Assembly: GCF_006345805.1 (NCBI RefSeq)
Contig: NW_021835987.1
Location: 278,218-342,217, forward strand
Direction of reading: 5' to 3'
Length of the DNA stretch: 64,000 nt
From: Octopus sinensis
Taxonomy: Eukaryota
The notes below the pieces were generated by a model. The model was not told the origin of the DNA. It did no database searches and saw only the letters and a program-made list of their open reading frames with translations. A program made the position numbers and the translations under genes. Shown in pieces: positions 1-39,182 of this stretch (positions are counted from its first letter, which is position 1; each line of letters opens with the position of its first letter).

Positions 1-20
1 TGCCGTTTTTTTCTCGGCTT

Positions 21-330
21 TCAATACTCCCTCAGTCCTAACTGCCACTAGCAAGCTTTCCTCGCTTTAGCATATCTGTCTCATCAAGTTCCCGAGTTCG
101 ATACCTACGCAGTCTTGCACACTTATCAGTGCCCTTCCTCCATTTGCCCTCTTCGTGTAGAGACGATCAGTGTCTGCACGTGGATGATGGCCTCCATGCA
201 TCATTAGACGCTTCCTTGTCTTCCTGTCCAACTCTTATCTCTCCTCCTCTGTTCAGTGAAGGATCCCAGCGCCATACCGAACTACTGCGGCTGCGCATAA
301 GTTCATGGCCGAAATTATGTTCCAGGTATT
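21..330 (-). mobile_element. Non-LTR retrotransposon fragment, R4/Dong-like post-RT region (copies 20110-20440 +, ~38600-38910 -, ~58840-59150 +)
   Basis: Translation AVVRYGAG...QETRKRLMMHGGHHPRADTDRLYTK..NGGRALISVQDCVGIELGNL matches the recalled HP-x-x-D-x-DRLY-x-x-R-x-x-GGRGL motif of RLE-type LINEs. Confidence 0.75.
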
Positions 331-344
331 CAGCTTTGAAGCCA

Positions 345-392
345 ATACTATTACTACTGCTGCTGCTATTACTACTACTACTACTACTACTG

Positions 393-427
<35 letters not shown>

Positions 428-644: not shown

Positions 645-1731
645 ACAGCCAATGGATTAAAGCATATGCCATACCAATGAATGCTGGTTCGAGAGTCTAT
701 GAGTCATTCATGAATATAGGAAATACTTCATCCTGGAAAGTGGACAAATGCAATGGTACCTTCTGTCCTAACTTCTTCCGACATCCCTTCCTTGATTTCT
801 GGGAACATCTTCCAATTAATGAGGTACGTAGCCATATGCATACACATACACTAATATATATATAATAATAGTAATAATCGTGACGTATATTTGCCATTTA
901 GATATGGCTAACCCCTAAGGGTGGATGCTACTGAAGTTTGTAGCCCCAGGAGGACACCTCCCAGAAACTCGAGTCCGTGTGTATCATAAGTTGAAGACGG
1001 GAAGGATGGCTTCCCTTTGCAAATACTGATAGGGCACAGAAAATGTGTCTATAGCCAGCGGAAGGAGGTGTCCTCCTGGGGCTACAAACTACAGTAGCAT
1101 CCACCCTTAGGGGTTAGCCATATTTAAATGGCAAATATACGTCACATGTTTTGTAGCTACCGTTTATAACACGCTCTAAGATTTATTATTAATAGTAATA
1201 ATGATTAACAGATATTTAGATCAATTCAATTGCTTGTTACATTTTTGACCTACAAAAATTATTTATGAGGAAGGCGAAACAGTGTTGAATAAAATTCTAT
1301 CCGCGGAAAACCGCAGTAATAAGAAAAGATTATCACAGACAAAAGAATCTCCTTTTGGGTTTTTTTTTTATTTGATTTTGATTTTCCAGTTTCAGCTAAT
1401 GAGCTGTGGCCATGCTGGGGCACCGCCATTTAATGAGTAAACGGGAAACAAAATCGATGAAATCAGCTTACCATACATGACTGATTTCAGCAGAAAGTAA
1501 AGCACGTGGACCTCGGTGGTACTTGGATTCAAAGCTGAATTACTTTGTCATTCTTCTTGTGAGATGGCAAGATTGAGTAACAAACAAAACCTTATGGGAA
1601 CAGACGAACCAGGGACCTGTCAGAGCCCAGATCAAGAGCAGTCATGGATCATGGCTAGTTCAAAATATAAATTTATTTCGTCACTGTATTTATTGCGGAG
1701 ATGTGTCAATTCATGAAATGTTTTACTCTAG

Positions 1732-1786: not shown

Positions 1787-3675
1787 GGGGGGTGGGGGGG
1801 GTGTAATAGAGCTAAAAACGGATGGATTATTTGGGTATAACGACACACGTTTCCTTTGCAGAAGATTGTTATTATAGACACATTACGTCATGCAACATGG
1901 AATGGAATAGGTTTGAGATCGTATGTAATATTATGAAATAAGTTTGAATAACATTACCAATTCTGTAGGTCATACTGTATTAGAGGTTAATTAGCGATGT
2001 ATGCCACATAGTATCATGGTAATATATGAATTTTTCAAATGAAGGGGTATCAAATATGTTATTTGATTCATTTAGAGATATTAATCGTCTGGAAGCCGTT
2101 TAGCGACGTGCAACCGAGAGAATACCCTCCATCAGGCATTTGCCATATTCTGAACGCCTTACTTCTCTGGGCATGGACACATTGAAACATTTTTTCACGC
2201 TGAGAGTTGCTGAAGCATGGAACAAACTGCCGGCATCGGTTGTTAGTTGTCGGAGCACTGCATCCTTCAAAACTTCCATGCTTTCTGAGATTCCCCAACA
2301 CTACACCTGATTTTCTCCCCTCCATACACACGCAAACATGTATCTGACTCATACACTGTTTGCTTTCCAGACATTTGTACTTTACTGCATATACTTTATA
2401 CGCACTTTCTGACAAGTTGTGGTGCACCTGAGCACTGTATACATTGACTTCATTATTATTATTATAGCAAGATACGGATTAGGTGATAGGCCAATCAAAA
2501 TCATCAATTTTGCCTGTTATGCTTTACTGTTTACACTGCGTGTGTGTCAGTGTGTCTCAGTGTGTGCGTGTGCGTGTGTGTGCGTTTGTGTGTGTGTGTC
2601 AGTGTGTCAGTGTGTGCGTGTGTGTGTGTTTGTGTATTTGCGTGTGTGTGTGTGTGTGTGTGTTTGTGAGTTTGTGTGTGTGTTTGTGTGTGTGTGTGTG
2701 AGTGTGTATGTGTGTGTACCCGTGTGTGTATATGTGCGTGCTACATGTTCATATCTTTTGCAGGTAAAACTGGTAATCTATAAAAACGGAACCGATTCGA
2801 AAACAATCATATTTGATGGACGAAATACAACACTTAACACCTGGTTCTCTCACGAAAACTTGAAAAGTTCACCATGGGACGACCTAGCATCCGACCCCAA
2901 TCCTAAGTACTTAATGAGGTGAGTATAGTATGTCTATATATATTTTATGCTGGGGTTTTATTCCGTTACGTAGAGACTTATCATGTTACAAAAAAAATTG
3001 CCTTTCGTAGGCAACAGATAGAAAGTTTAACCTATACATTTAGATGCTAAACTTTCTGGAGACGAACAACATATGCCCAGGTTTTCAACAGTATATCTTC
3101 ATTTGTTATGATATACAGAATGCTAATTTGAACTAATACTGCTGCCGTCTGTAAAGATGAAATATATCCGGCGTTCCGTCCAGGAGGGGAACCTATACGC
3201 CAAGAAACCTTGAAAGCGGCCCTTATGAGCCAGGCATGGCTCGAGAAGGAACAACCAATCGCCGCTGCAAGAGGCTATAACTCTATTAATGGTACATTTC
3301 TGTATTTTCAACACTACACGACCAAATGAAATGCTTTCTCGTTACGAACAGCAGAGTTACCAGAATTTCACATTAAGTAGCATATTTTAAAGTGGGAAGC
3401 ACGAAAATGTATTTTCACCTTAAAATGTACACTCTTTTATTCTTTTACTCGTTTCAGTCATTTGACAGCGGCCATGCTGGAGCAGTTTTAGTCGAGCAAA
3501 TCGACCCCATGATTTATTCTTTGTAAGCCTAGTACTTATTCTATCAGTCTCTTTGGCCGAACCGCTATGTTACGGGAAAGTAAACACACCAGATTCGGGG
3601 GGACAAACACAGACACACAAACACACATACACACACATACACACACACACACACACGCACACACACACACACACA

Positions 3676-3911: not shown

Positions 3912-4383
3912 CTGTATGTTTGTCTGTGTTTTTCCCTCCAACATCGCTTGACAAAAGATGCTGGTGTGTTTACGTCCCCGTAACTTAGCGGTTCTGCAAA
4001 AGAGACCGATAGAATAAGTACTAGGCTTACAAAGAATAAGTTCTGGGGTCGATTTGCTCGACTAAAGGCGGTGCTCCAGCATGGCCGCAGTCAAAATAAC
4101 TGAAACAAGTAAAAGAGTAAAGGAGTAAACGTTTAGGCTTTCATATTCTGAAACCCATCCAACTTTTATTAACTCCACAGAAACGATCGTCCCTTCGGTA
4201 TATCAAAAGGGGCTAAGTGTACAAAGATGAGTGGCTGGTTCATTATTGATCCCCGTCCGACAAATTGTGGGTTTGCTTACAAAGATCATTCTCCTTCAGT
4301 CCGTTATTCTGATAAAAACTCGAAAGTTGTTTGGAGAAACGGTGAGTGATATTTTTATAATTTGTGTGTGTGTGTGTGTTTTG

Positions 4384-4425
<42 letters not shown>

Positions 4426-4923
4426 CGTATGTGTGTGTGTGGGCGTGTGCACGAGTGTGTGTGTGTGTATGCGTATGTGTGTGTGTGGGCGTGTGCACGA
4501 GTGTGTGTGTGTGTGCGTATGTGTGTGTGTGGGCGTGTGCACGAGTGTGTGTGTGTATGCGTATGTGTGTGTGTGGGCGTGTGCACGACTGTGTGTGTGT
4601 GTGCGTATGTGTGTGTGTGGGCGTGTGCACGAGTGTGTGTGTGTGTGTGTGCGCGCGTGTATATGTGTGTGTATGTGCGTATTTATGTGTGTGAGCCTTG
4701 ATTCAACTTATTTATTATTAAGAGCATCCCAACCATGACCCTCCTGTATGTTTCCCACTCAACGATGTAAAGATTCGGCTGCTATTTCTAGTAATTCCAG
4801 TGAACGCGCATGAAGACCTTCCACGATTTATTTCCATTCCTTTGGTTATTGATGTTGTTATTGTTACTTCCAGGCTATACATTAGCAGACTCCATGGCCG
4901 TATTCATCCGCCTGAGGCAGTAG
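645..4923 (+). CDS. Paralog P1 (unit 1): 4-exon gene for an uncharacterised ~180-aa extracellular-type domain; 5' exon(s) not found
   Basis: Exons 645-823, 2764-2918, 4181-4341 and 4874-4923 all have AG/GT boundaries, with phases 1-0-2-1 that join in frame. Product: (D)[59 protein letters not shown]|[51 protein letters not shown]|[54 protein letters not shown]|[16 protein letters not shown]. It has four N-x-S/T sequons and two Cys pairs, and the same exons recur in other paralogs. Confidence 0.88.
880..1145. mobile_element. Hairpin MITE family A (copies at 19471-19733, 39464-39728, 58160-58426)
   Basis: Terminal inverted repeats of ~80 bp (gtgacgtatatttgccatttagatatggctaacccctaagggtggatgctactg...) around a non-coding core. 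Confidence 0.75.
2075..2310 (+). mobile_element. CR1/L2-type LINE 3' fragment, left arm only (copy ~40637-40872)
   Basis: [36 protein letters not shown] resembles the LE-x-VQRRAT...Y-x-ERL-x-x-L motif downstream of RT. Confidence 0.7.
3425..3625. mobile_element. SINE segment of the same family (also 3925-4125, 6055-6235, 8270-8468, 13645-13825, 15995-16190, 23655-23850)
   Basis: Recurrent ggccatgctggagcaccgcc...gtaagcctagtacttattctatcggtctcttttgccgaaccgc...gtaaacacacc motif abutting (CA)n. Confidence 0.8.
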
Positions 4924-4949
4924 AATTTATCCAGCACATGATACTATAG

Positions 4950-5797
4950 TTGTTGTTCACGCCCATCCAATCCTGCTGACCACCACTAGTGATCTCAGTA
5001 GGTCAAGTATTACCTGTTAATAAAGAATCCATATAAATATTCTAAGTTGTTCACGTCCACCCAATCCTGCTGACCACCACTAGTGATCCCAGTAGGTCAA
5101 GTATTACCTGTTGATAAAGAATCCATAGAAACATTCTGTGTTGTTAACGTCCATCCAATCCTGCTGACCACCACTAGTGATCCCAGTAGATCAAGTATTA
5201 CCTGTTAATAAAGAATCCATATAAATATTCTAAGATGTATACGTCCATCCAATCCTGCTGACCACCACTAGTGATACCAGTACGTCAAGTATTACCTGTT
5301 AATAAAGAAACCATATAAATATTCTAAGATGTTAACGTCCATCCAATCATGCTGACCAAAACTAGTGATACCAGTAGGTCAAGTATTACCTGTTGATAAA
5401 GAATCCATAGAAATATTCTGTGTTGTTAACGTCCATCCAATCCTGCTGACCACCACTAGTGATCCCAGTAGATCAAGTATTACCTGTTAATAAAGAATCC
5501 ATATAAATATTCTAAGATGTATACGTCCATCCAATCCTGCTGACCACCACTAGTGATACCAGTACGTCAAGTATTACCTGTTAATAAAGAAACCATATAA
5601 ATATTCTAAGATGTTAACGTCCATCCAATCATGCTGACCACCACTAGTGATACCAGTAGGTCAAGTATTACTTGTTAATAAAGAATCCATATAAATATTC
5701 TAAGATGTTAACGTCCATCCAATCATGCTGACCACCACTAGTGATACCAGTAGGTCAAGTATTACCTGTTAATAAAGAATCCATATAAATATTCAAA
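4950..5797 (+). repeat. 94-bp minisatellite, 9 units, in the P1 3' UTR (unit-2 copy ~43505-44350)
   Basis: Unit registers at 4959, 5053, 5147 ... 5711. Consensus gttaacgtccatccaatcctgctgaccaccactagtgatcccagtaggtcaagtattacctgttaataaagaatccatataaatattctaagat. Confidence 0.95.
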
Positions 5798-5845
5798 GTC
5801 CGTCTTTCGAGTTGTGATTGGCTTCTCTGACCCCACAGACTGAGC

Positions 5846-5877
<32 letters not shown>

Positions 5878-6543
5878 TTCTAGTTCTTACTAAATGCTTT
5901 GCACCTTAGGTAAGTGTCTTCTACGAAAGCCTTCTGAGTGGATTAAGTAGGCGGGAACCGAAAGAAACATGTCGTTTATGTGTGTGTGTGTGTGTGTGTG
6001 TGTTTATATGTATGTGTGTGTGTGTGTTTTTATGCGTGTGCTTGCTACCCTCCCCACCAACATCGCTTGATAAACGATGCTGGTGTGTTTACGTCGCCGT
6101 AACTTTGTGGGTCGGCAAAAGAGACCGATAGAATAAGTACTAGGCTTACAAAGAATAAGGTCTGAAGACGATTTCTTCGACTAAAGGCGATGCTCCAGCA
6201 TGGCCGCTGTCAAATAACTGAAATAAATACAAGAAATGAATAATTAAACGGCTAGTATTCTGATTTCGAATTTAAACCTTAAGTTCGGGATGAGGTCGAT
6301 CTTATAGCAGTTTATATATATTGTTAAAATCTTTTATCCTTTATGGAAAATGATGTAAACCTCTGTAGAGACAACTGGAATTTCATAAGTATAAGTGACT
6401 AATATCAAAGAAGTACCAACGGTATCCCCTAGTATATATACATATATAGAACTTCCAATATCGTTAGTCGATATAGAGCAAAACTGGTGTACACTTGGAT
6501 AAAATTTATCCCTAGGATAAAACAACCTATTTTCATACAAACT

Positions 6544-6599
<56 letters not shown>

Positions 6600-6602
<3 letters not shown>

Positions 6603-6909
6603 AAGCGCAATGGACCATTGGTTCAGGCAGCTGACTGGCGGTTGTAGGATCGCGGTTTCTATTCCCAGACCGGGCTTTGTGAGTGTTTATTGAGCGAAAA
6701 CACCTAAAGCTCCACGAGGCTGCAGCAGGGGGGTGGTGGCGGTCCCTGCTGTACTCTTTCGCCATAACTTTCTTTCACTCTTTCTTCTGTTGGCCTGCTT
6801 TCTTAGCCAGTGGGGTGGCGTCATTTGAAGGGTAAAACAATGCGAAGCACATTGTGACCAGCGATGTGTAGCAACATGTGATAGCTTGGTCGGTCACGGT
6901 GACCACGGT

Positions 6910-6912
<3 letters not shown>
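6600..6912 (+). mobile_element. tRNA-headed SINE, second family (mirror 12990-13310)
   Basis: tgtggaagcgcaatggaccattggtt...ggtttctattccc head, with a tail at gaccacggtga + (TA)n. Confidence 0.7.
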
Positions 6913-6947
<35 letters not shown>

Positions 6948-6991
6948 TATAATAAATCTCTGAACGAAATATAACAGTGACTGCACGACCC

Positions 6992-7118
6992 GTGAGGTAT
7001 ATTTGCCATCTCAATATGGCTAACCACTAAGTGCTGGTGTTACTGTAGCTTGTAGCCCCAGGAGAACATGTACTCCAGCTGGCTTTAGGCACCCTTTCTG
7101 TGCCCTTAAGGTATTTGC
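6992..7118. mobile_element. Half MITE family B, truncated at its apex (unit-2 copy 45522-45648)
   Basis: Starts at the gtgaggtatatttgcc terminus and stops at aaggtatttgc, the hairpin centre of the full element. Confidence 0.7.
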
Positions 7119-7201
7119 ACACAACAATTCCACTATTACTACTCACAGTAAGACACATACACACACACACACACACACACAAAAGAGAAAACATCACTTA
7201 C

Positions 7202-8172
7202 CGTGGTTCCATACGACTTTCATTTTTGTGTCAGAATAACGGATTGAAGGAGAATGATCTTTGTAACCAAACGAATAAGATGGCGGAAGCTCATCGATAA
7301 CCAGCCAGCCGCTTACTTTTGTACTTGTGTTGCCTTTTGTTATATAGAAGCTATATTTTCCTCTGTGAAGTTAACAAAAGTTGGTTGGGTTTCAGAATAT
7401 GAAAATCTAAACATTTATGAAATATATATCAATATAGGCGCAGGAGTGGCTGCGTGGTAAGTAGCTTGTTTACCAACCACATGGTTCCAGGTCCAGTCCT
7501 ACTGCGTGGCACCTTGGGCAAGTGTCTTCTACTATAGCCTCGGGCCGACCAAAGCCTTGTGAGTGGATTTGGTAGACGGAAACTAAAAGAAGCCTGTCGT
7601 ATATATATATATATATATATAATAATAAATATTAGGGAATAAATCCAAATTTACAGGGAAAAAATCAGATTTAGGATTAAATCGATTTTATAGTAAAATA
7701 TTATAAAATATTATTCGAGACAAAACCACTATTTTGCAAAACAAACAAGGAAAAACTTAATCAATACATAAAATTTTAATAAATAGTCAAAAAAACCGCC
7801 ACTACAATCGTTTCTTGTCTTGATCGACAATCTTCAGGTGGACTTCCAATAATTCAGTGTCAATTGTATATTTTATTTATCTGTATGAGTGTGGGTGTGT
7901 AAATATTGTTGTATATATCGAGTTTAGTGAGTATATATATGAGTATATGTGAGGGAGTATATGTATCTGTTGTGTGTGTGTGGTGTTTTTGTGTGTGTGT
8001 GTGTTTGTGTGTGAATGTTTTGACACTGAATTATTGGAAGTCCACCTGAAGATTGTCGATCAAGACAAGAAACGATTGTAGTGGCGGTTTTTTTTTACTA
8101 TTTATTAAAATTTTATGTATTGATTAAGTTTTTCCTTGTTTGTTTTGCAAAATAGTGGTCTTGTCTCGAATA

Positions 8173-8257
<85 letters not shown>

Positions 8258-8791
8258 ATGTGTGTTGTGTGTCTGTGTTTGTCCCTCTAGCATTGCTTGA
8301 CAACCGATGCTGGTGTGTTTATTTCCCCGTCACTTCGCGGTTCGGCAAAAGAGACCGATAGAATAAGTACTGGGTTTACAAAGAATAAGTCCCGGAGTCG
8401 AGTTGCTCGATTAAAGGCGGTGCTCCAGCATGGCCGCAGTCAAACGACTGAAACAAGTAAAAGAGAGTATGTCCGCAATACACAATTGAATCGGTCAGTG
8501 TTCAAAATAGCCTTCAGTGTATCATACTTAAACTATATATCTGTAGCCTACGAAAAGTGATTCTTAATATTATATTTCTTTACATAACGAAACGAAAGAA
8601 AATAAGAAAAAAGATATGTAAATATACTTATTTAGCTCCACTGAGAAACGCAATTTTGTGGCTGAAGCTAGATCGTCCCATGGTGAACTTTTCAAATTTT
8701 CCAGAGAGAACCAGGTTTTAAGGGTTGTATTTCGTCCATCAAATATCATAGTTACCACATCTGTTTGGTTTTCGTAGAGCACCAGTTTCAC
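7202..8791 (-). CDS. Paralog P3 (unit 1): exons B and C only
   Basis: Exon B starts at 8791 after ttttgcag ([51 protein letters not shown]...); likely donor after 8628. Exon C is 7362-7202, 161 bp, cacag/gtaagt (GKYSFYITKGNTSTKVSGWLVIDELPPSYSFGYKDHSPSIRYSDTKMKVVWNH). Exons A and D were not found nearby. Confidence 0.75.
7437..7605 (+). mobile_element. tRNA-headed SINE (copies 18340-18500, 45971-46135, 57020-57185)
   Basis: Pol III A-box-like tggctgcgtgg and B-box-like ggtccagtcc/ggttcagtcc, followed by a body ending gaagcccgtcg + (TA)n. Confidence 0.8.
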
Positions 8792-8968
8792 CTGCAAAAG
8801 AAATGTTCATTTCATTAGTTGGTTCATAAACTTTAGGACATTAAAATGTTAACTTATATATTTATTAAAATGATAATTCTAATTACATACATACATATAC
8901 TATATCATTCTATGTATATAACATAATAATACACGCAATTATTAAAAAACTTGAATATAAATTATTAT

Positions 8969-8999
<31 letters not shown>

Positions 9000-9010
9000 C
9001 ATACATACAT

Positions 9011-9071
<61 letters not shown>

Positions 9072-10163
9072 CATATCGACATCTCTCTCTTCCTCTCTCT
9101 CAATATATGTATATATATATGTGTGGTGTGTGTGTGTGTGTGTGTGTGTGTGTCATATATATGACATGAACTAAGATTCACCTGATATCCACGCACATTA
9201 CGGATTTTACTGTAATGATCCCGGGAATATGGACTAAGTTCGTACGAAATATGCAACTTGCGGAAATACGCGTAGCGAGGGATTAAAATACTTATAAATC
9301 CCATTCATGGATTATTATGACTATAACTATGTTTATCCTACTTTGAATCGGAACACCTCGGTACAATTCCATAAAACGCTGTTGCAGGTTCGAATCATTG
9401 GACGACAGCCGACGCAATGAAATAGCAGTTTTTATATGAGTACTCAAAAAACGAGCTTTTGTGTGTGTACGTGTGTGCATGTGTGTGCGTGCTTGCGTCT
9501 GTTTGTGCGCGTTTGTGTGTGTGTGTGTGTGCGCGCGCGTGTATTTGTATACTTAAACTTCGAACACCAAGAACAAGTGTTCAACACCGTTTTGGTGGAT
9601 AAAATTCGTCTATTTAAGCTACCATTAGTTACACGTTCAGATGAACTTCTTAATATCTGAACAATTTTGAAAGCTAATTGCCCGCAAGGAATGACATTCG
9701 GCTGTATTGTGGAGGAAAACACGAAAAATCTCAGGAAAAATTTCCTGAACTTACATGACATCGATTCTATGACATATAGAATCAAGTAATCAAGGGAAGT
9801 TACTCTCTAATGACAACTTTTGATTGATTACCTCCCTTGGATTTAAATACTTTCTTGGATGGTGAATTTGCATCATATCATATTATGTTATATTCTTGGT
9901 ATATGTGGAGGGAATTCCTCGGGGTAGGGGTGGCATGTGTGGAGTTCATGTGTTGTATATATTGAATGTTCACGCATCGAGAAAGAAACTAACCTGCTGG
10001 GATTGTTGGCATGGGAGTCTCCTCTTTGACATGTCGGAGTATGAAATATTGCTTGTGTATGTAGCGAGAGAAGGTCTCATCCCTAATATTTAAGATATTA
10101 TCTGTTGACTGTATGATATTTAGCTTTTCAGTGATACAGAGCTAATCATTGTAAAGTATACTA

Positions 10164-10398
10164 GCCATCTCAATATGGCTAACCACTAAGGGTGAGTGTT
10201 ACTGTAGCTTGTAGCCCCAGGAGATCATCGTCTCCAGCTGGCTTTAGGCACCCTTTCTGTGCCCTTATGGTATTTATGGTATTTGCAAATACCTTAAGAG
10301 CACAGAAAGTGTGCCTAAAGCCAGCTGGAGACAATGATCTCCTGGGGCTAAAAGCTACAGTAACACCCACCCTTAGTGGTTAGCCATATTGAGATGGC
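10164..10398. mobile_element. Near-perfect hairpin MITE family B at the palindrome centre (unit-2 copy 48726-48900, right half garbled)
   Basis: gccatctcaatatggctaaccactaaggg...ggtattt-gc-aaatacc...cccttagtggttagccatattgagatggc. The whole element is self-complementary and its termini are related to family A. Confidence 0.75.
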
Positions 10399-11481
10399 TA
10401 GTATACTTTACAATGATTAGCTCTGTATCACTGAAAAGCTAAATATCATACAGTCAACAGATAATATCTTAAATATTAGGGATGAGACCTTCTCTCGCTA
10501 CATACACAAGCAATATTTCATACTCCGATATTTCAAAGAGGAGACTCCCATGCCAACAATCCCAGCAGGATAATTTCTTTCTCGAAGAGTGAACATTAAA
10601 TATATACAACACATGAACTCCACACATGCCACCCTACCCCGAGGAATTCCCTTCACATACACCTAGAATATAACATAATATGATATGATGCAAATTCACC
10701 ATCCAACAAAGTATTTAAATCCAAGGGAGGTAATCAATCAAAAGTTGTCATTAGAGAGTACCCTCCTTGATTACTTGTTTCTATATGTCATAGAATCGAT
10801 GTCATGTGAATTCAGGAAATTTTTCCTGAGATTTTTCGTGTTTTCCTCCACAATAGAGCGGAATGCCATTCCTTGCGGGCAATTAGCTTTCAAAATTGTT
10901 CAGATATTAAGAAGTTCATCTGAACGTGTAACTAATGGTAGCTTAAATAGACGAATTTTATCCACCAAAACGGTGTTGAACACTTGTTCTTGGTGTTCGA
11001 AGTTTAAGTATACAAATACACGCGCGCGCACACACACACACACACAAAAACGCGCACAAACAGACGCAAGCACGCACACACATGCACACACGTACACACA
11101 CACAAGCTCGTTTCTTGAGTACTCATATAAAAACTGCTATTTCATTGCGTCGGCTGCCGTCCAATGATTCCTACCTGCAACAGCGGTTTTATGGAATATC
11201 TGCGTGTTTGCATACGTAGATATTAACAAGTGAAACCATGGTACGTAGGTAATCGTTTTTTATTCCGTATATTTTCATTTGTTTCGCTTAATTTTACATT
11301 TTGGCGTTTTGCTGAGATTTTGCTTGAGAACACACCCTTCGTTTAATGGCGATTTGACGTCTATGTTTAGCATATTAGGTGTCCTCTTGATTTTGTATGT
11401 ACGCAATTTTTAATCTTCGGATGTTTTAAATATGCTAAGCCACTGGTTTCAATTGATTAATATCAATTTCTACTCTTATTA

Positions 11482-11571
<90 letters not shown>

Positions 11572-11728
11572 TGTAGGTCCCGGGTTGAGTCGGGGTTAAC
11601 CACAGTAAATAAGGTACTCAATACATTGCAGCTTCCTGAAGATTTCATCTGAATGAAACAGTTCTAGTCCTGTAGAAGCTCCTTCTATAAAATAATATAT
11701 ATATATATATATATATAATTGTGTGTGT

Positions 11729-11981
11729 GTGAGGTATATTTGTCATCTCAATATGGCTAACCACTAAAGGTGGATGTGTTGCTGTAGCTTGTAGCCCCAT
11801 GAGAACATCTACTCCAGCTGGCTTTAGGCACGCTTTCTGTGCCTTTAAGGTATTTGAAAATATCTTAAGAGCACCGAAAGCATGCCTATTGCCAGCTGGA
11901 TGAGATGTTCTCCTGGGGCTACAAGCTACAGTAACACCCACTCTAGTGGTTAGCCATATTGAGATGGCAAATATACCTCAC
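11729..11981. mobile_element. Full hairpin MITE family B (unit-2 copy 50302-50555)
   Basis: Termini gtgaggtatatttg...caaatatacctcac, with long internal inverted repeats. Confidence 0.75.
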
Positions 11982-12064
11982 GTTGTCGTTCAGTTACTGT
12001 TTTATACTTCGTTCAGAGATTTATTGTATATATATATATGTATATTTTTATTTCTTTTAATAAT

Positions 12065-12964
12065 ATATTATACGACTAACGCACGCACCCTCTTAAGTAA
12101 GATTGATCTGTATATCAAGTTCGCCTTGATATTAACTCTCACGCGCCACTCTGCTCTTTCTTCTTTCTTTCTTTCTTCTATCCCATCCCCTTTTCGTCTT
12201 TTTCCCTCACTTAACTTGTCTCCTCCTCTCTCTCATTCATTCTCATTCTCTCTCTCCCCCTCACCATTCTTCATGGTCTCCTCGCACCATTCCCTTTCTC
12301 TCCTTCCTCTTGCTCCTCCTCCCCCATTCCCGTCGTCCATCTGCGACGATACTTCCGCCGTAACTGCTAACGTCTTTCTCGCCCGCCTTTTAAGGCTACT
12401 GGACGACTTTTCCTGCTCTCTCGTCGTTCACAAAAAATTAGCGTTTGCAATACTTTTTTCGTTCGGCGTCAACAGCCCTTCTTATCTTGTTCTCCCTGTC
12501 CTGTCTTTTACTATTATATTTTTTTACTGTTTATATATATATTTTTTTAACTGTTTATATTTTTGTACTGTCGTTACTGTCCTCGTTTTTTTTTACCGTT
12601 TTCTTATTTTTTACCATTTTTTTACCCCTCTGCGAAAAGATCTCAGAATTTTAATTGATTTGCTTTTCGCAGGAAGGAAAGTTTCTTGTCGAAGATACGT
12701 CTCGCTTTATCCTTCGAAACGTAGAGTAGATGAAACCTTAGCGACTGAAGAAGGGTTTTTTTCGTTCTGTTAACTGTCCTGTACTCCATTTTTTTGTTGT
12801 TTTTAAAAAAATGCCCTGTTCCTTTGGTTTGTGTCTATGTTTGCGTTTCTCTATGTGTTCGACGTCCCTTTGGTGTCCTGTACTCATATATGCGTGTATA
12901 TGTACATGTAGAGATAGGTACGTACATATATGTTTATATATATGCATATGTTTTATTTCTTTTA

Positions 12965-12990
<26 letters not shown>
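12065..12990. repeat. ~0.9 kb insertion, right arm only (copy ~50645-51580), possibly Penelope-like
   Basis: Absent at the mirrored (TA)n at 6910-6950. Contains gaagaagggtttttt and cgaaacg motifs recalled from PLE ends. Confidence 0.45.
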
Positions 12991-13004
<14 letters not shown>

Positions 13005-14074
13005 CGTGGTCACCGTGACCGACCATGCTATCACATGTTGCTACACATCGCTGGTCACAATGTGCTTCGCATTGTTTTAGCCTTCAAATGACGCCACCCC
13101 GCTGGCTAAGCAAGCAGGCCAACAGAAGAAAGAGTGAAAGAAAGTTATGGCGAAAGAGTACAGCAGAGATCGCCACCAGCCACTGTCAGAGCCTCGTGGA
13201 GCCTTAGGTGTCTTCGCTCAATAAACCCTCACAAAGCCCGGTCTGGGAATCGAAACCGCGATCCTACAATCGCGAGTCCGCTGCCCTAACAAATGGTCCA
13301 TTGCGCCTCCACACACACCACACACATATATATAGTTTGTACGGAAAGAGGTTGTTTTTCCTAGGGATAAATTTTATCCAAGTGTACACCAGTTTTGCTC
13401 TATATCGACTAACGATATTGGAAGTTCTATATATGTATATATACTAGGGGATACCGTTGGTTCTTCTTTGATATTAATCACTTATACTTCTGAAATTCCA
13501 GTTGTCTCTACAGAGGTTTACGTTATTTTCCATAAAGGATAATAGATTTTAACAATATATATAAACTGCTATAAGATCGACCTCATCACGAACTTAAGGT
13601 TTAAATTCGAAATCAGAATACTAGCCGTTTATTATTCTTTTCTTGTATTTATTTCAGTTATTTGACAGCGGCGCTGCTGGAGCACCGCCTTTAGTAGAAC
13701 AAATCAACTTCAGGCCTTATTCTTTGTAAGCCTAGTACTTATTCTATCGGTCTCTTTTGCCGACCCACAAAGTTACGGGGACGTAAACATACCAGCATCG
13801 TTTATCAAGCGATGTTGGTGGGGAGGGTGGCAGGCACACGCATAAAAACACACACACACACATACATACAGTAAGTGACACACTCACACACACACGACAT
13901 GTTTCTTTCGGTTCCCGCCTACTAAATCCACTCACAAGGCTTTGGTAGAAGACACTTACCTAAGGTGCAACGCATTTAGTATGAACTAGAACATAAACAA
14001 CAACAACAACAACAACAGCTCTGTCTGTGGGGTCAGAGAAAGCCAATCACAACTCGAAAGACGGACTTCGAATA

Positions 14075-14625
14075 TTTATATGGATTCTTTATTAACAGGT
14101 AATACTTTTCCTACTGGGATCACTAGTGTGGTCAGCAGGATTGGATGGACGTGAACAACTTAGAATATTTATATGCATTCTTTATTAACAGGTAATACTT
14201 GACCTACTGGGATCACTAGTGGTGGTCAGCAGGATTGGATGGACGTTAACAACTTTGAATATTTATATGGATTCTTTATTAACAGGTAATACTTGACCTA
14301 CTGGGATCACTAGTGGTGGTCAGCAGGATTGGATGGACGTGAACAACTTAGAATATTTATATGCATTCTTTATTAACAGGTAATACTTGACCTACTGGGA
14401 TCACTAGTGGTGGTCAGCAGGATTGGATGGACGTGAACAACTTAGAATATTTATATGCATTCTTTATTAACAGGTATACTTGACCTACTGGGATCACTAG
14501 TGGTGGTCAGCAGGATTGGATGGACGTTAACAACTTTGAATATTTATATGGATTCTTTATTAACAGGTAATACTTGACCTACTGGGATCACTAGTGGTGG
14601 TCAGCAGGATTTGATGGACGTTAAC
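14075..14625 (-). repeat. 94-bp minisatellite, 6 units, in the P2 3' UTR (unit-2 copy ~52645-53205)
   Basis: Reverse complement of the P1 array, with six units. Confidence 0.95.
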
Positions 14626-14659
14626 AACAACAACTATAGTATCATGTGCTGGATAAATT

Positions 14660-17197
14660 CTACTGCCTCAGGCGGATGAATACGGCCATGGAGTCTCTAA
14701 TGTATAACCTGGAAGTAACAATAACAACATCAATAACCAAAGGAATGGAAATAAATCGTGGAAGGTCTTCATACGCGTTCACTCGAATTACTAGAAATAG
14801 CAGCCAATCTTTACATCGTTGAGTGGGAAACATAAACAGGAGGGTCATGGTCGGACGCTTTTAATAATAAATCAGTTGAATCAATGCTCACACACATAAA
14901 ACGCACACACACACACAAAATAAAAAAATATCACTCACCATTGTCCCATAAGATTTTCTTGTTTTTATGAGAATAACGGATTGACGGAGAACGACGTGTG
15001 TAACCGAACGAACACGCCGGCGGATGGTCATCAGTAACCAACCAGCCAGTCATCTTGAACATCTATTTATTTTTTTCGATATATGAAGAGACGATCTTTC
15101 CTGTGGAGTTAATAAAAGTTGGATGGGTTTCAGAATATGGAAACCTAACATTTACTCTTTTACTTGTTTCAGTCATTTTGACTGTGGCCATGCTGGAGCA
15201 CCTCTTTCAGTCGAGCAAATCGACACCAGGACTTATTCTTTGTAAGCCTAGTACTTATTCTATCGGTCTCTTTTACTTGTTTCAGTCATTTGACTGTGGC
15301 CATGCTGGAGCACCTCTTTTCAGTCGAGCAAATCGACCCCAGGACTTATTCTTTGTAAGCCTAGTACTTATTCTATCGGTCTCTTTTAACTTGTTTCAGT
15401 CATTTTCACTGCGGCCATGCTGGAGCACCTCTTTTCAGTCAGTCGAGCAAATCGACCCCAGGACTTATTTTTGTAAGCCTAGTACTTATTCAATCGGTCT
15501 CTTTTACTTGTTTCAGTCATTTGACTGCGGCCATGCTGAGCACCGCCTTTCAGTCGAGCAAATCGACCCCAGAACTTATTCTTTGTAAGCCTAGTACTTA
15601 TTCTATCGGTCTCTTTTGCAGAACCGCTAAGTTACGGACGTAAACACACCAGCATCATTTGTCAAGCGATGTTTGGGGGAGAAACCAGACAAACATACAG
15701 AAACACACCAACACACCACCCACAATATATATACATATATATATAGTATATATATATATATATATAGCACATACGACGGCTTCTTTCAGTTTCCGTCTAC
15801 TATTCCCGAGGCTATAGTAGAAGACACTTGCCAAGTATATATAGTCGCGTTGTTGTATATTTTGTGTGTTTCATGTTTAGATTAACTGTATATATATATG
15901 TTGTGTGTGTGTGTGTGTGTGTGTGTGTGGTGTGCGGGTGTGTGTGTGGTGTGGGTGTGTGGTGTTGTATGTGTGTGTGTGTGTGTTTGTGCTGTATGTC
16001 CCCAACACGCTTGACAAACCGATGCTGCTGTGTTTACTTTCCCGTAACATAGCGGTTCGGCAAAAGAGACCGATAGAATAATACTAGGCTTAAAAAGAAT
16101 AAGTCCATGGGGTCGATTTGCTCGACTGAAGGCAGTGCTTCAGCATGGCCGCTGTCAAATAACTGAAACAAGTAAAAGAATAAAAGAGTGTACATTTTAA
16201 GGTGAAAATACATTTTCGTGCTTCCCACTTTAAAATATGCTACTTAATGGAAATTCTGGTAACTCTGCTGTTCGTAACGAGAAAGCATTTCATTGGTCGT
16301 GTATGTTGAAAATACAGAAATGTACCATTAATAGAGTTATAGCCTCTTGCAGCAGCGGTGGTTGTTCCTTCTCGAGCCATACCTGGCTCATAAGGGCCGG
16401 TTTCCCGGTTTCTTGGCGTACAGGTTCCCCACCTGACGGGACGCCTATCCGTCGCAGGTGAGCTGTAAGATTTAGAAGGAAAGAGTGAGAGAAGTTGTGG
16501 CGAAGAATCAGCAGAAGTTTCGCCATTACCTTCTGTCGAAGCTGCGTAGAGCTTAGGTGTTTCGCTCATAAACCCACATATCGCCCGCTGAGAGTCGAAC
16601 CCGCCGACCCCTCGACCGCGAGTCCGCTGCTCTAACCACTAGGCCATGTGCCTCCACAGCAGCGGCGGTGGAATAGCTAAATCTATTTCTTGCTTTAGCA
16701 AGCAATCACAGCGGTGCTGTAGTTAGCCCGAATGCCTGGATATATTTCATCTTTACAGACGCAGCAGTATTATTTCAAATTAGCATTCTGTATATCATAA
16801 CAAATGAAGATATACTGTTTGAAGCCTGGGCATATTTGTTCGTCTCCAGAAAGTTTAGCGTCTAAATGTATAGGTTAAACTTTATATCTGTTTGCCTACG
16901 AAAGTTATATGTTTTGTACCATGATAAGTCTCTACGTAACGAAGAAAGAACAAGCATAAAAGATATATAGATATACTATACTCACGTCATTGAGAAATAC
17001 AGATTGGTGGCGGAAGCTAGGTCGTCCCATGGTGAACTTTTCAAATTTTTCTGAGAGAACCCAGGTTTTAGGGTTGTATTCGTCCATCAATATCATAGTT
17101 ACGAAGCGATTTCGTTTTTATAGATTACCACTTTTACCTGCAAAAAAATGAGCATGTAGCACACACATATACACCCGGTACACCCACACACATACAC

Positions 17198-17822: not shown

Positions 17823-19968
17823 CAACACAAACACCCACACCAAACCCCCACACACCACCCCCACACTGTACACACCACACACAAACTCACATACACACAC
17901 ACAAACTCACACACACACAAACGCACACACACAACCTCACCACACACACTGTCACACACTGACACCCACTGACACACACGCAGAGTAAGAACAGTAAAGC
18001 ATGTGGACCTTGTGGCCACTTGGACTCAAAGTTAATATTTTGTTATTCTTCTTGTGAGATGCCAAGTTCGAATAACAAACAAAGCTGTTAGACTAATGTT
18101 CACTCTCATCATTCTTTTGATCGAAACGAATTTGCATAACAGTCGAAATTTAATGATTTTGATTGGCCTATCACCTAATCCGTATCTTGCTATTATAATA
18201 ATAAATGAAATTAATGTATACGTGCTCAGGTGCACCACAACTTGTCAGAAAGTGCGTATAAAATATATGCAGTAATGTAGAAATGTCTGGAAAGCAAAGA
18301 GTGTATGAGTCAGACATAAATAATTTTTTATAAACAAACGCAGAAGTGGCTGTGTGGTAAGTAGCTTGCTACCAACCACATGGTTCCGGTTCAGTCCCCA
18401 CTGCGTGGCATCTTGGGCAAATGTCTTCTACTATAGCCTCGGGCCGACCAAAGCGTTGACTGGATTTGTAGACGGAAACTGAAAGAAGCCCGTCGTAAAT
18501 GTTTATATATTGTGTGTGTGTGTGTTTGTGGTTGTGTGTCTTGTTTTGTCCCCCTAGCATTTCTTGACAACCAATGCAAAAGAGTAGAAGAGTAAACCCG
18601 AAAGATTTGCAGTTACGGAGCAAAAGCTACTATGGAAGGCTCATAGTATAATAAACTGTACAATAACTCTATATAATATATATCATAATGATATTTAACC
18701 TCCGATTTTAAAGCGACAATTTTTGAATGTATATAAAGACCGAAAAATGATGAGCTAACCTCGGGCTGAGGTCATGTATTTCGCTCAAACCGCATTGTTG
18801 ATTAAAATTTCTTCATTTGTGTATTAAGGCTATTATTGGTTTCATTTAAGGGCGAATGTCTTAATATGTCAACATTTCCAAGCCGATTACCTGGAAGGAG
18901 GGTGTTAGTCTCCATTGTGGATGAAACCACGAAATATCTAGAGTAAAACATTCCATGAATGACACATCTCCGCAATAAATACAGTGACGAAAATAAATTT
19001 CAATTTTGAACTAGCCATGATCCAGACTGCTCTTGATCTGGGCTCTGACAGGTCCCTGGTTCGTCTGTTCCCACAAGGTTTTGTTTGTTACTCAATCTTG
19101 CCATCTCACAAGAAGATGACAAACTAATTCAGCTTTGAATCCAAGTTACACCGAGGTCCCACGTGCTTTACTTCTGCCGAGCTCAATAAAACTTTTACAG
19201 TCAGATTGTATGCTATTTCAGCACATCGATTTTGTTTCCCATTTACTCATCCAAACCCCAAAAGGAGATCTTTTGTCTGTGATAATCTTTCTTATTACTG
19301 CGGTTTGCCGCGGATAGAATTCTATTCAACATTGTTTCGCCTTCCTCATAAATCATTTTTGTAGGTCAAAAATGTAACAAGCAATTGAATTGATCTAAAT
19401 ATCTGTTAATCATTATTACTATTAATAAATAAATCTTAGAGCGAGTTTATAAACGTAGCTACAACACACCGTAACGTATATTTGCCATTTAGATATGGCT
19501 AACCCTAAGGTTGGATGCTACTGTAGTTGTAGTCCCAGGAGGACACCTCCGTCCGCTGGCTATAGACACATTTTCTGTGCCCTATCAGTATTTGCAAAGT
19601 GAAGCCATCCTTCCCGTCTTTAACTTATGATACACACGGACTCGAGTTCTGGGAGGTGTCCTCCTGGGGCTACAAACTACAGTAGCATCCACCCTTAGGG
19701 GTTAGCCATATTTAAATGGCAAATATACGTCACGATTATTACTATTATTATATATATATTAGTGTATGTGTAATGCATACGGCTACGTACCTCATCAATT
19801 GGAAGATTTCCCAGAAATCAAGGAAGGGATGTCGGAAGAAGTTAGGACAGAAGGTACCATTGCATTTGTCCACTTTCAGGTTGAAGGACTTCCTATATTC
19901 AGGAAATGAATTATAAATTTTCGAACCAGCTCTCATTGTTAGGGCATATGTTTTAATCCATTGTCTGT
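14660..19968 (-). CDS. Paralog P2 (unit 1), palindromic mirror of P1; contains small indels here
   Basis: Exon A 19968-19791, B 17137-16986, C 15100-14939, D 14708-14660, with splice sites homologous to P1. Each exon is 1-3 nt short, while the unit-2 copy is in frame, so the indels are probably sequencing error. Confidence 0.75.
15150..15690. repeat. Tandem array of a ~114-bp SINE segment, 4 units (5 units at 53735-54330)
   Basis: Repeated acttgtttcagtcatttgactgtggccatgctggagcacc...cttattctatcggtctctttt. A single copy lies in the mirrored left arm (3925-4125). Confidence 0.9.
16445..16660 (-). mobile_element. tRNA-headed SINE, right arm only (copy ~55140-55355)
   Basis: Minus strand tgtggaggcacatggcctagtggttagagc...ggttcgactc shows clear A and B boxes. 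Absent at the mirrored site near 3165. Confidence 0.75.
17160..17980. repeat. Long degenerate (CA)n tract (copy 55865-56660)
   Basis: Directly visible; far longer than the mirrored tract at 2540-2730. Confidence 0.95.
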
Positions 19969-22490: not shown

Positions 22491-22507
22491 TTCACTTACA
22501 TCTATAG

Positions 22508-22559
22508 AAGGAAATCTCGTTGTTGTCATTCGTGCTGACGACTGTCATTATATCTTTCG
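22508..22559 (+). other. Candidate signal-peptide-like micro-exon upstream of P4 (copy at 61282-61333)
   Basis: tag|AAGGAAATC...TTTCG|gtgagt reads KEISLLSFVLTTVIISF and ends in phase 1, like the exon A acceptor. It is identical in both units. The upstream in-frame ATG is separated from it by TAG. Confidence 0.3.
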
Positions 22560-38363: not shown

Positions 38364-38973
38364 CGAGCATGAGTGCGTGTATGTCTACAGTGATAGATCC
38401 GAGTGTTTCATTTATTCACAATTTGATTTATTAATTTCACCGGACTATGAATACCTATAATGGTGCCTACGCAGTCGTCCACACTCATCACTGCCCTTAT
38501 CAGTGGTTACAGGGAAATGATTGCGGAGTCCCTTTTTGCCTTCTGCTTTTCCTTATCCTTTTTGTATTTCTTCCTTTGTTTTGCCGTTTTTTTCTCGGCT
38601 TTCAATACTCCCTCAGTCCTAACTGCCACTAGCAAGCTTTCCTCGCTTTAGCATATCTGTCTCATCAAGTTCCCGAGTTCGATACCTACGCAGTCTTGCA
38701 CACTTATCAGTGCCCTTCCTCCATTTGCCCTCTTCGTGTAGAGACGATCAGTGTCTGCACATGGATGATGGCCTCCATGTATCATTAGACGCTTCCTTGT
38801 CTTCCTGTCCAACTCTTATCTCTCCTCCTCTGTTCAGTTAAGGATCCCAGCGCCATACCGAACTACTGCGGCTGCGCATAAGTTCATGGCCGAAATTATG
38901 TTTTAGGTATTCAGCTTTGAAGCCAATACTATTACTACTGCTGCTGCTATTACTACTACTACTACTACTACTG

Positions 38974-39011
<38 letters not shown>

Positions 39012-39182
39012 GCTGCTGCTGCCGCTGCTGCTGCTGCTGCTGCTCCTGCTCCTACCACTACTACTACTACTGCTGCTGTTGCTACTACTACTACTACTAC
39101 TATTACTACTACTACAACTACTACTACTGATATTACTACTACTACTGCTGCTGCTGCTACTGCTGCTACTGCTGCTACTACA

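What the first reader, a model, noticed from the sequence alone, without database searches (positions are those of the whole stretch)
4130..15150. Coding exons diverge much faster than the introns around them (P1 vs P2)
Hand alignment: exon C differs at about 50 of 161 nt (~70% identity, about half the residues replaced, only 4 purely synonymous codons). Its upstream intron flank is ~95% identical, and the intron before exon D plus exon D itself are ~97-98% identical. Exon B has 16 replacement vs 4 synonymous codons, and exon A about 9-11 vs 1. Cys, Trp and the core motifs are retained. Exon-faster-than-intron divergence is the established signature of diversifying selection in toxin and immune-recognition families such as snake PLA2 and conotoxins. 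Selective homogenisation of non-coding DNA by conversion is the alternative. Noisy P2 sequence may inflate the counts slightly.
Basis: partly seen in the sequence, partly recalled or inferred. Interest (0 to 1): 0.85.

Follow-up and report, generated by a model that had tools for sequence, protein, structure and literature searches.

The report
Hypervariable exon in octopus gene palindrome
Two inverted copies of an uncharacterised secreted octopus gene have nearly identical introns but very different middle exons. This is mostly because gene conversion keeps erasing differences in the non-coding DNA while an old, hypervariable binding-loop exon escapes it.

Summary
The window is the end of an unplaced Octopus sinensis contig carrying a 38.6-kb direct repeat. 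Each unit holds a large palindrome with two tail-to-tail paralogues, P1 (+) and P2 (-). They belong to an octopus-expanded family of about 295-aa secreted proteins: a PAN/Apple-like N-terminus plus an unnamed beta-rich C-terminal domain, encoded by five coding exons.

Alignable intron differs by 4.7% (131/2787). The exons differ by 8.9% (B), 14.8% (B') and 31% (C); exon D differs by 2%.

For P1 versus P2, dN/dS is about 1 in exons C and B', and synonymous divergence there (0.28 and 0.17) is itself well above intron divergence. At synonymous sites in exon C, P1, P2 and a third paralogue type are about equidistant. Intron differences fall in blocks (runs test p<1e-4). So exons and introns have different histories: conversion homogenised the non-coding DNA and exons A and D, while exons C, B' and the 5' part of B kept old divergence.

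Positive selection on exon C is supported in a younger clade (omega 2.48, p=0.011). This is a new instance of a known pattern.

The parts
645..823 (+).
   Evidence: Has an AG acceptor, a GT donor and an open frame, and matches the family proteins by tblastn. It is 8.9% different from P2c.
2764..2918 (+).
   Evidence: It is 14.8% different from P2c, with 15 replaced and 4 synonymous codons.
4181..4341 (+). P1 exon C, 161 nt: the hypervariable exon, with two Cys and two Trp
   Evidence: It is 31% different from P2c. The frame is open in all 23 paralogues examined.
4874..4923 (+). P1 exon D, the terminal coding exon, with its stop codon at 4921-4923
   Evidence: It shows 1 synonymous difference from P2.
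14660..14708 (-). P2 exon D
   Evidence: This copy has a 1-nt deletion that is absent from P2u2 and P2c.
14939..15100 (-). P2 exon C
   Evidence: Two homopolymer deletions break the frame here but not in copy P2c.
16986..17137 (-). P2 exon B'
   Evidence: Three 1-nt deletions occur in this noisy copy. The exon is intact at 55688-55842 and in P2c.
19791..19968 (-). P2 exon B
22501..23010 (-). P2 exon A (signal peptide plus PAN-like domain). It is broken or duplicated in this copy.
   Evidence: tblastn. It is intact in P2c and on contig C11141.
7202..7362 (-). P3 exon C: a third, degenerate paralogue fragment inside the stated range
   Evidence: Both Cys are lost.
8636..8794 (-). P3 exon B'
4126..4180 (+). 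Intronic element directly upstream of exon C (CATATTCTGAAACCCA...polypyrimidine...AG), conserved in all paralogues
   Evidence: Mean pairwise identity is 84% across 23 paralogues, against 69% for the exon core.
1..417 (.). Outer inverted repeat, partner at 20023-20430, lying in intron A-B just upstream of exon B
   Evidence: There are 0-2 mismatches per 100 sites between P1 and P2c over the first 357 nt.
9366..11197 (.). Central near-perfect palindrome: arms 9366-10275 and 10287-11197, with an 11-nt spacer
   Evidence: about 96% complementary.
38582..64000 (.). Second copy of the 38.6-kb unit. P1' has exons at 39229-39407, 41330-41484, 42741-42900 and 43429-43478. P2' has exons at 58661-58483, 55842-55688, 53683-53517 and 53288-53239.

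Best explanation
P1 and P2 are tail-to-tail paralogues on the two arms of a large palindrome. They sit in a tandem, birth-and-death array of an octopus-expanded secreted protein family.

Their exons and introns do not share one genealogy. Repeated gene conversion, between the arms and with other copies, has homogenised the introns, the flanks and exons A and D to about 95-100% identity. Exon C, exon B' and the 5' part of exon B have escaped. They still carry an old divergence at synonymous as well as replacement sites.

The edges of the divergent islands coincide with the exon edges. The reason is that the splice-proximal intron is conserved by purifying selection across the whole family.

Inferred, not shown:
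- The islands persist because convertants that erase the difference are selected against, or because the high local divergence itself blocks conversion tracts, or both.
- Exon C encodes two variable, Cys-bearing loops between conserved beta-strands. These look like a ligand-binding surface that is under diversifying selection in the family.
For: Genealogy differs between exons and introns:
- Intron divergence is 4.7%, against 8.9%, 14.8% and 31% in exons B, B' and C.
- Synonymous divergence is also raised. It is 4/14.3 in exon C and 4/23.3 in exon B' in codons that keep their residue, against 131/2787 in introns (p=0.0035 and 0.022). NG86 dN/dS is 0.93-1.17 in B' and C.
- In exon C, pS is 0.30 for P1-P2c, 0.34 for P1-P3 and 0.41 for P2c-P3. 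Yet P3's introns cannot be aligned with those of P1 and P2 beyond about 60 nt.
- Relative-rate counts in exon C are symmetric: 12-20 P1-specific against 18-20 P2-specific changes.

Conversion is active:
- Intron informative sites among P1, P2c and P1d form blocks, with 78 runs against a permuted mean of 128 and a minimum of 104 in 10,000 permutations.
- Intron divergence is overdispersed, 0-13 per 100 sites, and highest next to exons.
- Introns group P1 with P2 (4.5% against 5.8-6.0% to P1d), while exons group P1 with P1d.
- Patches are exchanged between copies. P2u2 carries a P1-type stretch in exon B, and P1x carries a P2-type codon.
- Elsewhere in the family the upstream and downstream introns of exon C disagree, for example 16/109 against 0/114 mismatches.

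No separate mutational process is needed. The transition:transversion ratio is the same in exons (41:48) and introns (87:80).

Selection on exon C:
- Omega is 2.48 in a 13-gene young clade, LRT against omega=1 p=0.011.
- Omega is 1.28 over 21 genes.
- All 23 copies of exon C have an open frame.
- The variable residues lie between predicted strands.
Against: - No donor or recipient for any specific conversion event was identified. Neither P1's nor P2's exon C has a close relative elsewhere in the assembly.
- The synonymous counts are small: 4 changes per exon.
- Exon B shows dS of about 0.03 with dN 0.097. That fits post-duplication selection better than old divergence.
- In a broader, more divergent sample exon C has omega 0.69, no higher than the other exons at 0.60-0.71. 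The evidence for selection therefore depends on the subset.
- The locus is repetitive and partly noisy, and it sits at a contig end.
Confidence: 0.6

Rival explanations
1. A recent inverted duplication was followed by positive (diversifying) selection, which drove replacement changes in the exons. The introns simply record the short time since duplication. This would resemble snake PLA2 and conotoxins.
For: - Exon B has 13 replacement and 1 synonymous change, with dS 0.03, about equal to intron divergence.
- P1 against P1d in the variable core of exon C (first 36 aligned codons) shows 16.5 replacement and 0.5 synonymous changes.
- The young clade gives omega 2.48, p=0.011.
- Structural Cys and Trp residues are retained while the loops change.
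- Neither exon C has a donor elsewhere in the genome.
Against: - dS in exons C and B' is 4-6 times intron divergence, and dN/dS is about 1.
- In exon C, P1, P2 and P3 are about equidistant at synonymous sites.
- The introns are mosaic rather than uniformly young.
- Introns and exons give conflicting groupings of P1, P2 and P1d.
Confidence: 0.2
2. A recent duplication of the whole gene was followed by replacement of single exons or exon segments. The replacements came by ectopic conversion or segment exchange from divergent paralogues that are lost or not assembled. This would be ASSET-like exon segment switching.
For: - Synonymous and replacement sites are equally diverged in exons C and B'.
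- Upstream and downstream introns of exon C often have different histories in the family. Some pairs have an identical exon C in introns that are 14% apart.
- Small patches are exchanged between copies.
Against: - No donor is present. The best non-self match to either exon C is 76-88%.
- It requires three separate exon-limited replacements in one gene.
- The raised divergence extends into the adjacent intron.
Confidence: 0.12
3. An assembly or polishing artefact. Near-identical stretches of paralogous copies were homogenised by misassigned reads, while divergent exons stayed distinct. Alternatively the copies are collapsed or duplicated haplotigs.
For: - The window is the last 64 kb of an unplaced contig holding 2.5 copies of a 38.6-kb unit.
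- P2 copies are indel-rich, at 9-20 per kb.
- Several short contigs carry alternative versions.
Against: - Three separately assembled P1 copies and three P2 copies agree on the exon differences.
- The introns still differ by 4.7% with a normal substitution spectrum.
- The exon differences keep the reading frames and the conserved residues.
Confidence: 0.05
4. A mutational process aimed at the exons (hypermutation of the variable exon) raises both synonymous and replacement rates.
For: dS and dN are raised together in exons C and B'.
Against: - The transition:transversion ratio is the same in exons and introns.
- Family-wide, the core of exon C is no more diverged than distal intron (69% against 64-71% identity).
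- Some pairs have an identical exon C in diverged introns.
Confidence: 0.03

Closest known systems
Accelerated evolution of snake venom-gland PLA2 isozyme genes and habu small-serum-protein gene arrays
   Same: A tandem array of paralogues in which intron divergence (KN) is lower than exon divergence. KA/KS is about 1 or higher, and the ends of the gene are conserved. The same three-rate comparison is used in PMC6609765, where recent pairs have KN 0.05-0.06 and KA/KS 1.5-1.7. The PLA2 case is from my own knowledge (Nakashima et al. 1993, 1995).
   Different: Here the protein is not a known toxin and its expression is unknown. For the pair in question KA/KS is about 1, not above 1. The introns are demonstrably mosaic, so conversion explains much of the contrast.
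Conotoxin genes (hypervariable mature-toxin exon, conserved signal exon and introns)
   Same: One exon carries nearly all the variation. Its Cys framework is conserved, while the signal and terminal regions are conserved. Synonymous rates in the variable exon are also raised (my own knowledge: Olivera 1999; Conticello 2001).
   Different: The protein is about 295 aa with a PAN-like domain and a beta-rich domain, not a small peptide. No venom context is shown.
Arm-to-arm gene conversion in large palindromes and concerted evolution of tandem families (for example primate Y-chromosome palindromes; my own knowledge, Rozen et al. 2003)
   Same: There are inverted arms several kb long with high identity and block-wise exchange between copies.
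   Different: Arm identity here is only about 95%, with islands of 70-85% that coincide with exons. The classic palindromes homogenise their genes as well.
ASSET: accelerated segment switch in exons of three-finger toxin genes (my own knowledge, Doley and Kini 2008-2009)
   Same: Exon segments differ far more than the surrounding introns.
   Different: No exchanged donor segments were found for P1 or P2.
Diversified mollusc recognition lectins (FREPs of Biomphalaria)
   Same: A secreted, expanded and variable mollusc family. Distant relatives of the C-terminal domain sit beside lectin-type domains, namely F5/8 type C, SUEL and Fibrinogen_C.
   Different: No fibrinogen or Ig domain is detected. 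There is no Pfam hit, and the best Foldseek fibrinogen-like hits have E>=0.13 and TM<=0.36. No somatic diversification is shown.

Membership tests
PLA2-type 'accelerated evolution' pattern | Intron divergence is lower than synonymous divergence of the exons. | tested here: met
   Intron divergence is 0.047, against pS 0.28 in exon C and 0.17 in exon B'. The feature is not met for exon B, where pS is 0-0.03.
PLA2-type 'accelerated evolution' pattern | KA/KS is at or above 1 in the mature-protein exons. | tested here: inconclusive
   For P1/P2, dN/dS is 3.25 in exon B (13:1, not significant), 0.93 in B' and 0.98-1.17 in C. The family's young clade gives 2.48 for exon C, p=0.011. A broad sample gives 0.69.
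PLA2-type 'accelerated evolution' pattern | A toxin or otherwise externally acting product expressed in a specialised gland. | not testable with these tools
   No expression data are available. No paper mentions the annotated family members.
Concerted evolution by gene conversion between palindrome arms or paralogues | Inverted or tandem copies with long stretches of high identity. | tested here: met
   The arms 1-6957 and 20430-12955 share 0-13% intron divergence.
Concerted evolution by gene conversion between palindrome arms or paralogues | A mosaic, block-wise distribution of shared differences among three or more copies. | tested here: met
   The runs test gives 78 observed against 128 expected, with 0 of 10,000 permutations as low.
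Concerted evolution by gene conversion between palindrome arms or paralogues | Discordant groupings of the same copies in neighbouring segments. | tested here: met
   Introns place P1 closest to P2c, while exons place P1 closest to P1d. Upstream and downstream introns of exon C disagree in other paralogues.
PAN/Apple domain proteins | A Pfam PAN model hit above the gathering score in the N-terminal domain. | tested here: inconclusive
   The best octopus members score PAN_3 at 17.0 bits against a cut-off of 21.1. More distant relatives with the same architecture pass, scoring PAN_1 at 31.5 and 28.1 bits.
Fibrinogen-related proteins (FREPs) | A Fibrinogen_C domain by sequence or fold. | tested here: not met
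   There is no Pfam hit at E<=10 and no PDB sequence hit. Foldseek gives E>=0.13 and TM<=0.36 on a model with mean pLDDT 51.

The most novel reading that the evidence does not exclude
Only one copy of exon A (promoter, signal peptide, PAN domain) serves the palindrome. It lies just outside a roughly 400-bp inverted repeat (1-417 and 20023-20430) that is almost identical between the arms.

Inversion between these repeats would swap which hypervariable gene body, P1 or P2, is joined to exon A. Both junctions exist in the assembly. Exon A joined to P2 occurs three times. Exon A joined to P1 occurs once, on contig C11141, which is 98.5% like the P2 upstream side and about 99% like the P1 body.

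The most novel reading is a recurrent flip-flop that uses the two diverged bodies as alternative cassettes, either as a germline polymorphism or somatically. That would also explain why their difference is preserved against conversion.
Probability: 0.07. Interest if true: 0.8.

Novelty: new member of a known kind. Interest (0 to 1): 0.45.

Why it matters
This is a clean, coordinate-level example of islands of divergence at exons within homogenised introns. It comes from outside the classic toxin and vertebrate immune families, in an uncharacterised family expanded in octopuses.

It shows that the exon-versus-intron contrast alone cannot be read as diversifying selection. Synonymous sites and the block structure of the introns have to be checked as well.

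It also nominates a candidate recognition protein. The candidate has a PAN domain, an unnamed beta-rich domain and two variable Cys-bearing loops. A locus architecture with one first exon and two inverted gene bodies is directly testable by PCR and RNA-seq.

Tried and rejected
- Six-frame Pfam scans of 4000-10300, with X at stops, found nothing. One call was over the size limit and one reference was out of frame.
- A word-index protein search with exon C alone found nothing, because P1 and P2 are not annotated.
- The idea that the 'exon' is part of a transposable element was rejected. There are only about 31 genomic matches, clustered in two arrays, and the reading frame is conserved in all of them.
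- Relaxed constraint or pseudogene decay was rejected as the cause. It cannot make exons diverge faster than introns, and the frames stay open.
I did not attempt it any other way.
- Per-exon omega in a broad sample did not single out exon C.
- The Foldseek search of the AlphaFold model gave no significant match, and a PDB sequence search gave none.
- A literature search for the annotated locus names gave nothing. A general search on octopus, Apple domain and gene expansion returned nothing relevant.


Full report
WHERE THE WINDOW IS. The window is the last 64 kb of an unplaced 342-kb contig (C12458:278218-342217) in a 2.72-Gb assembly. The annotated proteins that share its contig lengths are from Octopus sinensis. 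A self-comparison shows a direct repeat of about 38.56 kb: 1-25410 matches 38582-64000 at 93-99% identity. The repeat continues upstream of the window. Inside each unit lies a large palindrome whose arms run 1-6957 and 20430-12955. Its near-perfect inner part is 9366-10275 against 10287-11197, centred near 10281.

WHAT THE EXONS ARE. Aligning the arms exposed a 161-nt island of about 70% identity at 4181-4341. It is bounded exactly by an AG acceptor and a GTGAGT donor, and lies between flanks of about 95% identity. Its frame is open, and the same frame is open in every related copy in the genome. All copies share the motif RRFY..C..GWL..C..YPSIRYS..W. The genome has only about 31 matches, clustered on this contig, on scaffold C30 and on two short contigs, so this is a gene family and not a transposon.

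A search with the first exon of a C30 paralogue found annotated 'uncharacterized' proteins of about 295 aa in O. sinensis, O. vulgaris and O. bimaculoides. These fix a five-exon coding structure:
- Exon A holds the signal peptide and a PAN-like domain.
- Exons B, B', C and a short terminal exon D follow.

In the window the exons lie as follows:
- P1 (+): B 645-823, B' 2764-2918, C 4181-4341, D 4874-4923.
- P2 (-): A 22770-22501, B 19968-19791, B' 17137-16986, C 15100-14939, D 14708-14660.

It also holds a degenerate third fragment (P3: B' 8794-8636, C 7362-7202, both Cys lost) and the palindrome centre. P1 has no exon A in the window or in the 10 kb upstream of it.

DATA QUALITY. The P2 copy in unit 1 has 1-nt homopolymer deletions in every exon. 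The unit-2 copy has different ones. A third copy at the start of the same contig (P2c, C12458:1-12304) is intact throughout. P2 copies differ from each other by 9-20 short indels per kb, against about 1 per kb among P1 copies. I therefore used P2c as the clean P2 sequence and masked gapped codons.

CHECK OF THE OBSERVATION. P1 was compared with P2c. Alignable, non-repetitive intron shows 131 mismatches in 2787 sites (4.7%). The exons show:
- exon B: 16/179 (8.9%)
- exon B': 23/155 (14.8%)
- exon C: 50/161 (31%)
- exon D: 1/50 (2%)

No 100-site intron window exceeds 13 mismatches. In exon C, 26 of 53 residues are replaced and 4 codons are purely synonymous. Exon B' has 15 replaced and 4 synonymous codons, and exon B has 13 replaced and 0-1 synonymous. 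Both Cys, both Trp and the SPS-RYS motif are kept.

DOES IT MEAN DIVERSIFYING SELECTION SINCE A RECENT DUPLICATION? Nei-Gojobori estimates are:
- exon B: dN 0.097, dS 0.03
- exon B': dN 0.157, dS 0.169
- exon C: dN 0.35-0.36, dS 0.30-0.37
- exon D: no change

I then counted synonymous differences only in codons that keep their residue. This gives 4 over 14.3 sites in exon C, 4 over 23.3 in exon B' and 0 over 26 in exon B. Against the intron, Fisher p is 0.0035, 0.022 and 0.63. Where the contrast is largest, synonymous sites are as diverged as replacement sites, and both are several times the intron value. That is not what selection on the protein after a recent duplication predicts.

EVIDENCE FOR DIFFERENT GENEALOGIES AND CONVERSION. 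I added P1d, a diverged P1-type copy from contig C10441. Introns make the three lineages nearly equidistant, with P1 and P2 slightly closest (4.5% against 6.0% and 5.8%). Exons instead group P1 with P1d: 2.2%, 5.8% and 16% between them in B, B' and C, against 9%, 15% and 29-31% to P2.

Further evidence:
- Along the introns, the informative sites form long blocks in which one or another lineage is the odd one out. There are 78 runs, against a mean of 128 and a minimum of 104 in 10,000 permutations.
- Intron divergence is overdispersed, with variance 13.8 against mean 4.9 per 100 sites. It is highest next to exons.
- Patches have clearly moved between copies. The unit-2 P2 carries a P1-type stretch in exon B, and the C11141 copy of P1 carries a P2-type codon.
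- In exon C, pS is 0.30 for P1-P2c, 0.34 for P1-P3 and 0.41 for P2c-P3.
- Relative-rate counts are symmetric, with 12-20 P1-specific against 18-20 P2-specific changes. Exon C of P1 and exon C of P2 are thus about as old as their split from P3-type genes, whose introns cannot be aligned to theirs beyond the splice-proximal 60 nt.
- The substitution spectrum is the same in exons and introns, 41:48 against 87:80. No special mutational process is indicated.

WHY THE ISLANDS STOP AT THE EXON EDGES. About 55 nt upstream of exon C and about 20 nt downstream are conserved in all 23 paralogues. Mean identity there is 84% and 83%, against 69% for the exon's first 108 nt and 64-71% for distal intron. The immediate flanks would look alike under any history. 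The coincidence of island and exon boundaries therefore does not discriminate between the models.

IS THERE SELECTION AT ALL? Family-wide, the core of exon C evolves at about the distal-intron rate. A one-ratio codon model gives omega 1.28 over 21 sequences. In a younger clade of 13 genes omega is 2.48, and omega=1 is rejected (2dlnL=6.45, p=0.011). Many of those pairs show 12-22 replacement against 0-1 synonymous differences, with intron flanks only 2-5% apart. Conversion from divergent donors cannot produce that, because it would import synonymous changes too.

The signal depends on the subset, however. A broader sample gives omega 0.69 for exon C, no higher than exons A, B and B' at 0.60-0.71. 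Some pairs have an identical exon C inside introns that are 14% apart. I read this as episodic positive selection on exon C in a family that recombines freely.

WHAT THE PROTEIN IS. No Pfam family covers exons B'-D. The N-terminus scores just below the PAN thresholds in octopus, but above them in more distant relatives with the same architecture. A profile of the family finds 933 cluster representatives at E<1e-3. Many are large extracellular mosaic proteins that also carry ZP, Sushi, TSP1, TIG plus Fibrinogen_C, PAN, F5/8 type C, SUEL-lectin or EGF domains.

An AlphaFold model of a full-length member is poor overall (mean pLDDT 51). It is moderate (67-87) for residues 160-295, which are mostly beta-strands. 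Foldseek gives no significant PDB match; the top hits are fibrinogen-like domains at E>=0.13. On the predicted secondary structure the conserved parts of exon C are strands (VRRFYIT, RGWLTIN, SIRY). The variable parts are the two loops between them, each holding one of the conserved Cys. I infer a secreted binding protein whose variable loops form the ligand site. This is inference, not demonstration.

VERDICT. The contrast is real and large. Conversion in a palindromic, tandem family homogenised the non-coding DNA and the terminal exons, while the hypervariable exon C, exon B' and the start of exon B kept old divergence. Selection for diversity is plausible as the reason the islands persist. 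It is supported for exon C in a younger clade, but it is not shown for this pair. The pattern matches what is described for snake venom-gland gene arrays (KN, KS and KA comparisons, PMC6609765) and for conotoxins. This is a new member of a known kind, in a family with no known function.

LOCUS ARCHITECTURE WORTH FOLLOWING UP. The palindrome has only one exon A, next to a roughly 400-bp inverted repeat that is almost identical between the arms. In the window exon A is joined to P2, and P1 has none. On contig C11141 the same upstream region (98.5% to P2c's) is joined to the P1 body. This could be a paralogous copy, an inversion polymorphism or a misassembly. I could not tell which.

Noticed in passing
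window 1-25410 vs 38582-64000; L027 (C12458:268218-278217): A direct repeat of about 38.56 kb (93-99% identity) fills the end of the contig. Part of a third unit lies upstream. The P1 halves are about 99.5% identical between units, while the P2 halves are only 93-95% identical and rich in indels.
   Followed up: partly
contig C11141 (L032/L033) 1-11217 vs window 25220-20023 and 1-6573: Here exon A and its upstream region (P2-type, 98.5% to P2c) are joined to the P1 gene body. The switch lies inside the inverted repeat 1-417 / 20023-20430. In the window P1 has no exon A. This could be an inversion between the arms, a paralogous copy or a misjoin.
   Followed up: partly
window 4126-4180, and the equivalent position in 23 paralogues (alignment): The roughly 55 nt of intron before exon C (CATATTCTGAAACCCA...) are more conserved across the whole family (84%) than the exon core (69%). 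This may be a branch-point or splicing element.
   Followed up: partly
window 4857-5908 and 14066-14663: A 94-nt minisatellite starts at or just after exon D, with about 11 copies on the P1 arm and about 6 on the P2 arm. The unit is single-copy, conserved 3' sequence in other paralogues.
   Followed up: no
window 15155-15617 (also 53739-54317); single copy at 3998-4117: A 113-nt fragment of a SINE-like repeat is tandemly amplified 4-5 times upstream of P2's exon C. It is single-copy at the same site in P1. The same repeat has matches on many chromosomes.
   Followed up: no
window 7202-7362 and 8636-8794 (-): A third family member (P3) lies between P1 and the palindrome centre. It is only a fragment (exons B' and C) and has lost both conserved Cys. 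A full-length relative is annotated on contig C11141.
   Followed up: partly
window 24310-24483 (+), 62892-63074 (+): A further isolated fragment resembling exon B' lies on the opposite strand beyond P2's exon A.
   Followed up: no
L021:3268-3270 and L026:3216-3218 (C30 and C12458 paralogues): Two otherwise well conserved paralogues each carry a single in-frame stop codon, a TAA in exon B and a TAG in exon A. These could be young pseudogenes or base errors.
   Followed up: no
window 58570-58600 (P2' exon B) vs 19875-19905: The unit-2 copy of P2 carries a P1-type stretch of about 24 nt in exon B (TTCATGAATATAGGAAATACTTCA). The other two P2 copies lack it. This looks like a short conversion patch inside an exon.
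   Followed up: partly
window 9366-11197: A near-perfect 915-nt palindrome (about 96%) with an 11-nt spacer forms the centre of the big palindrome. It has no coding potential that I could see.
   Followed up: no
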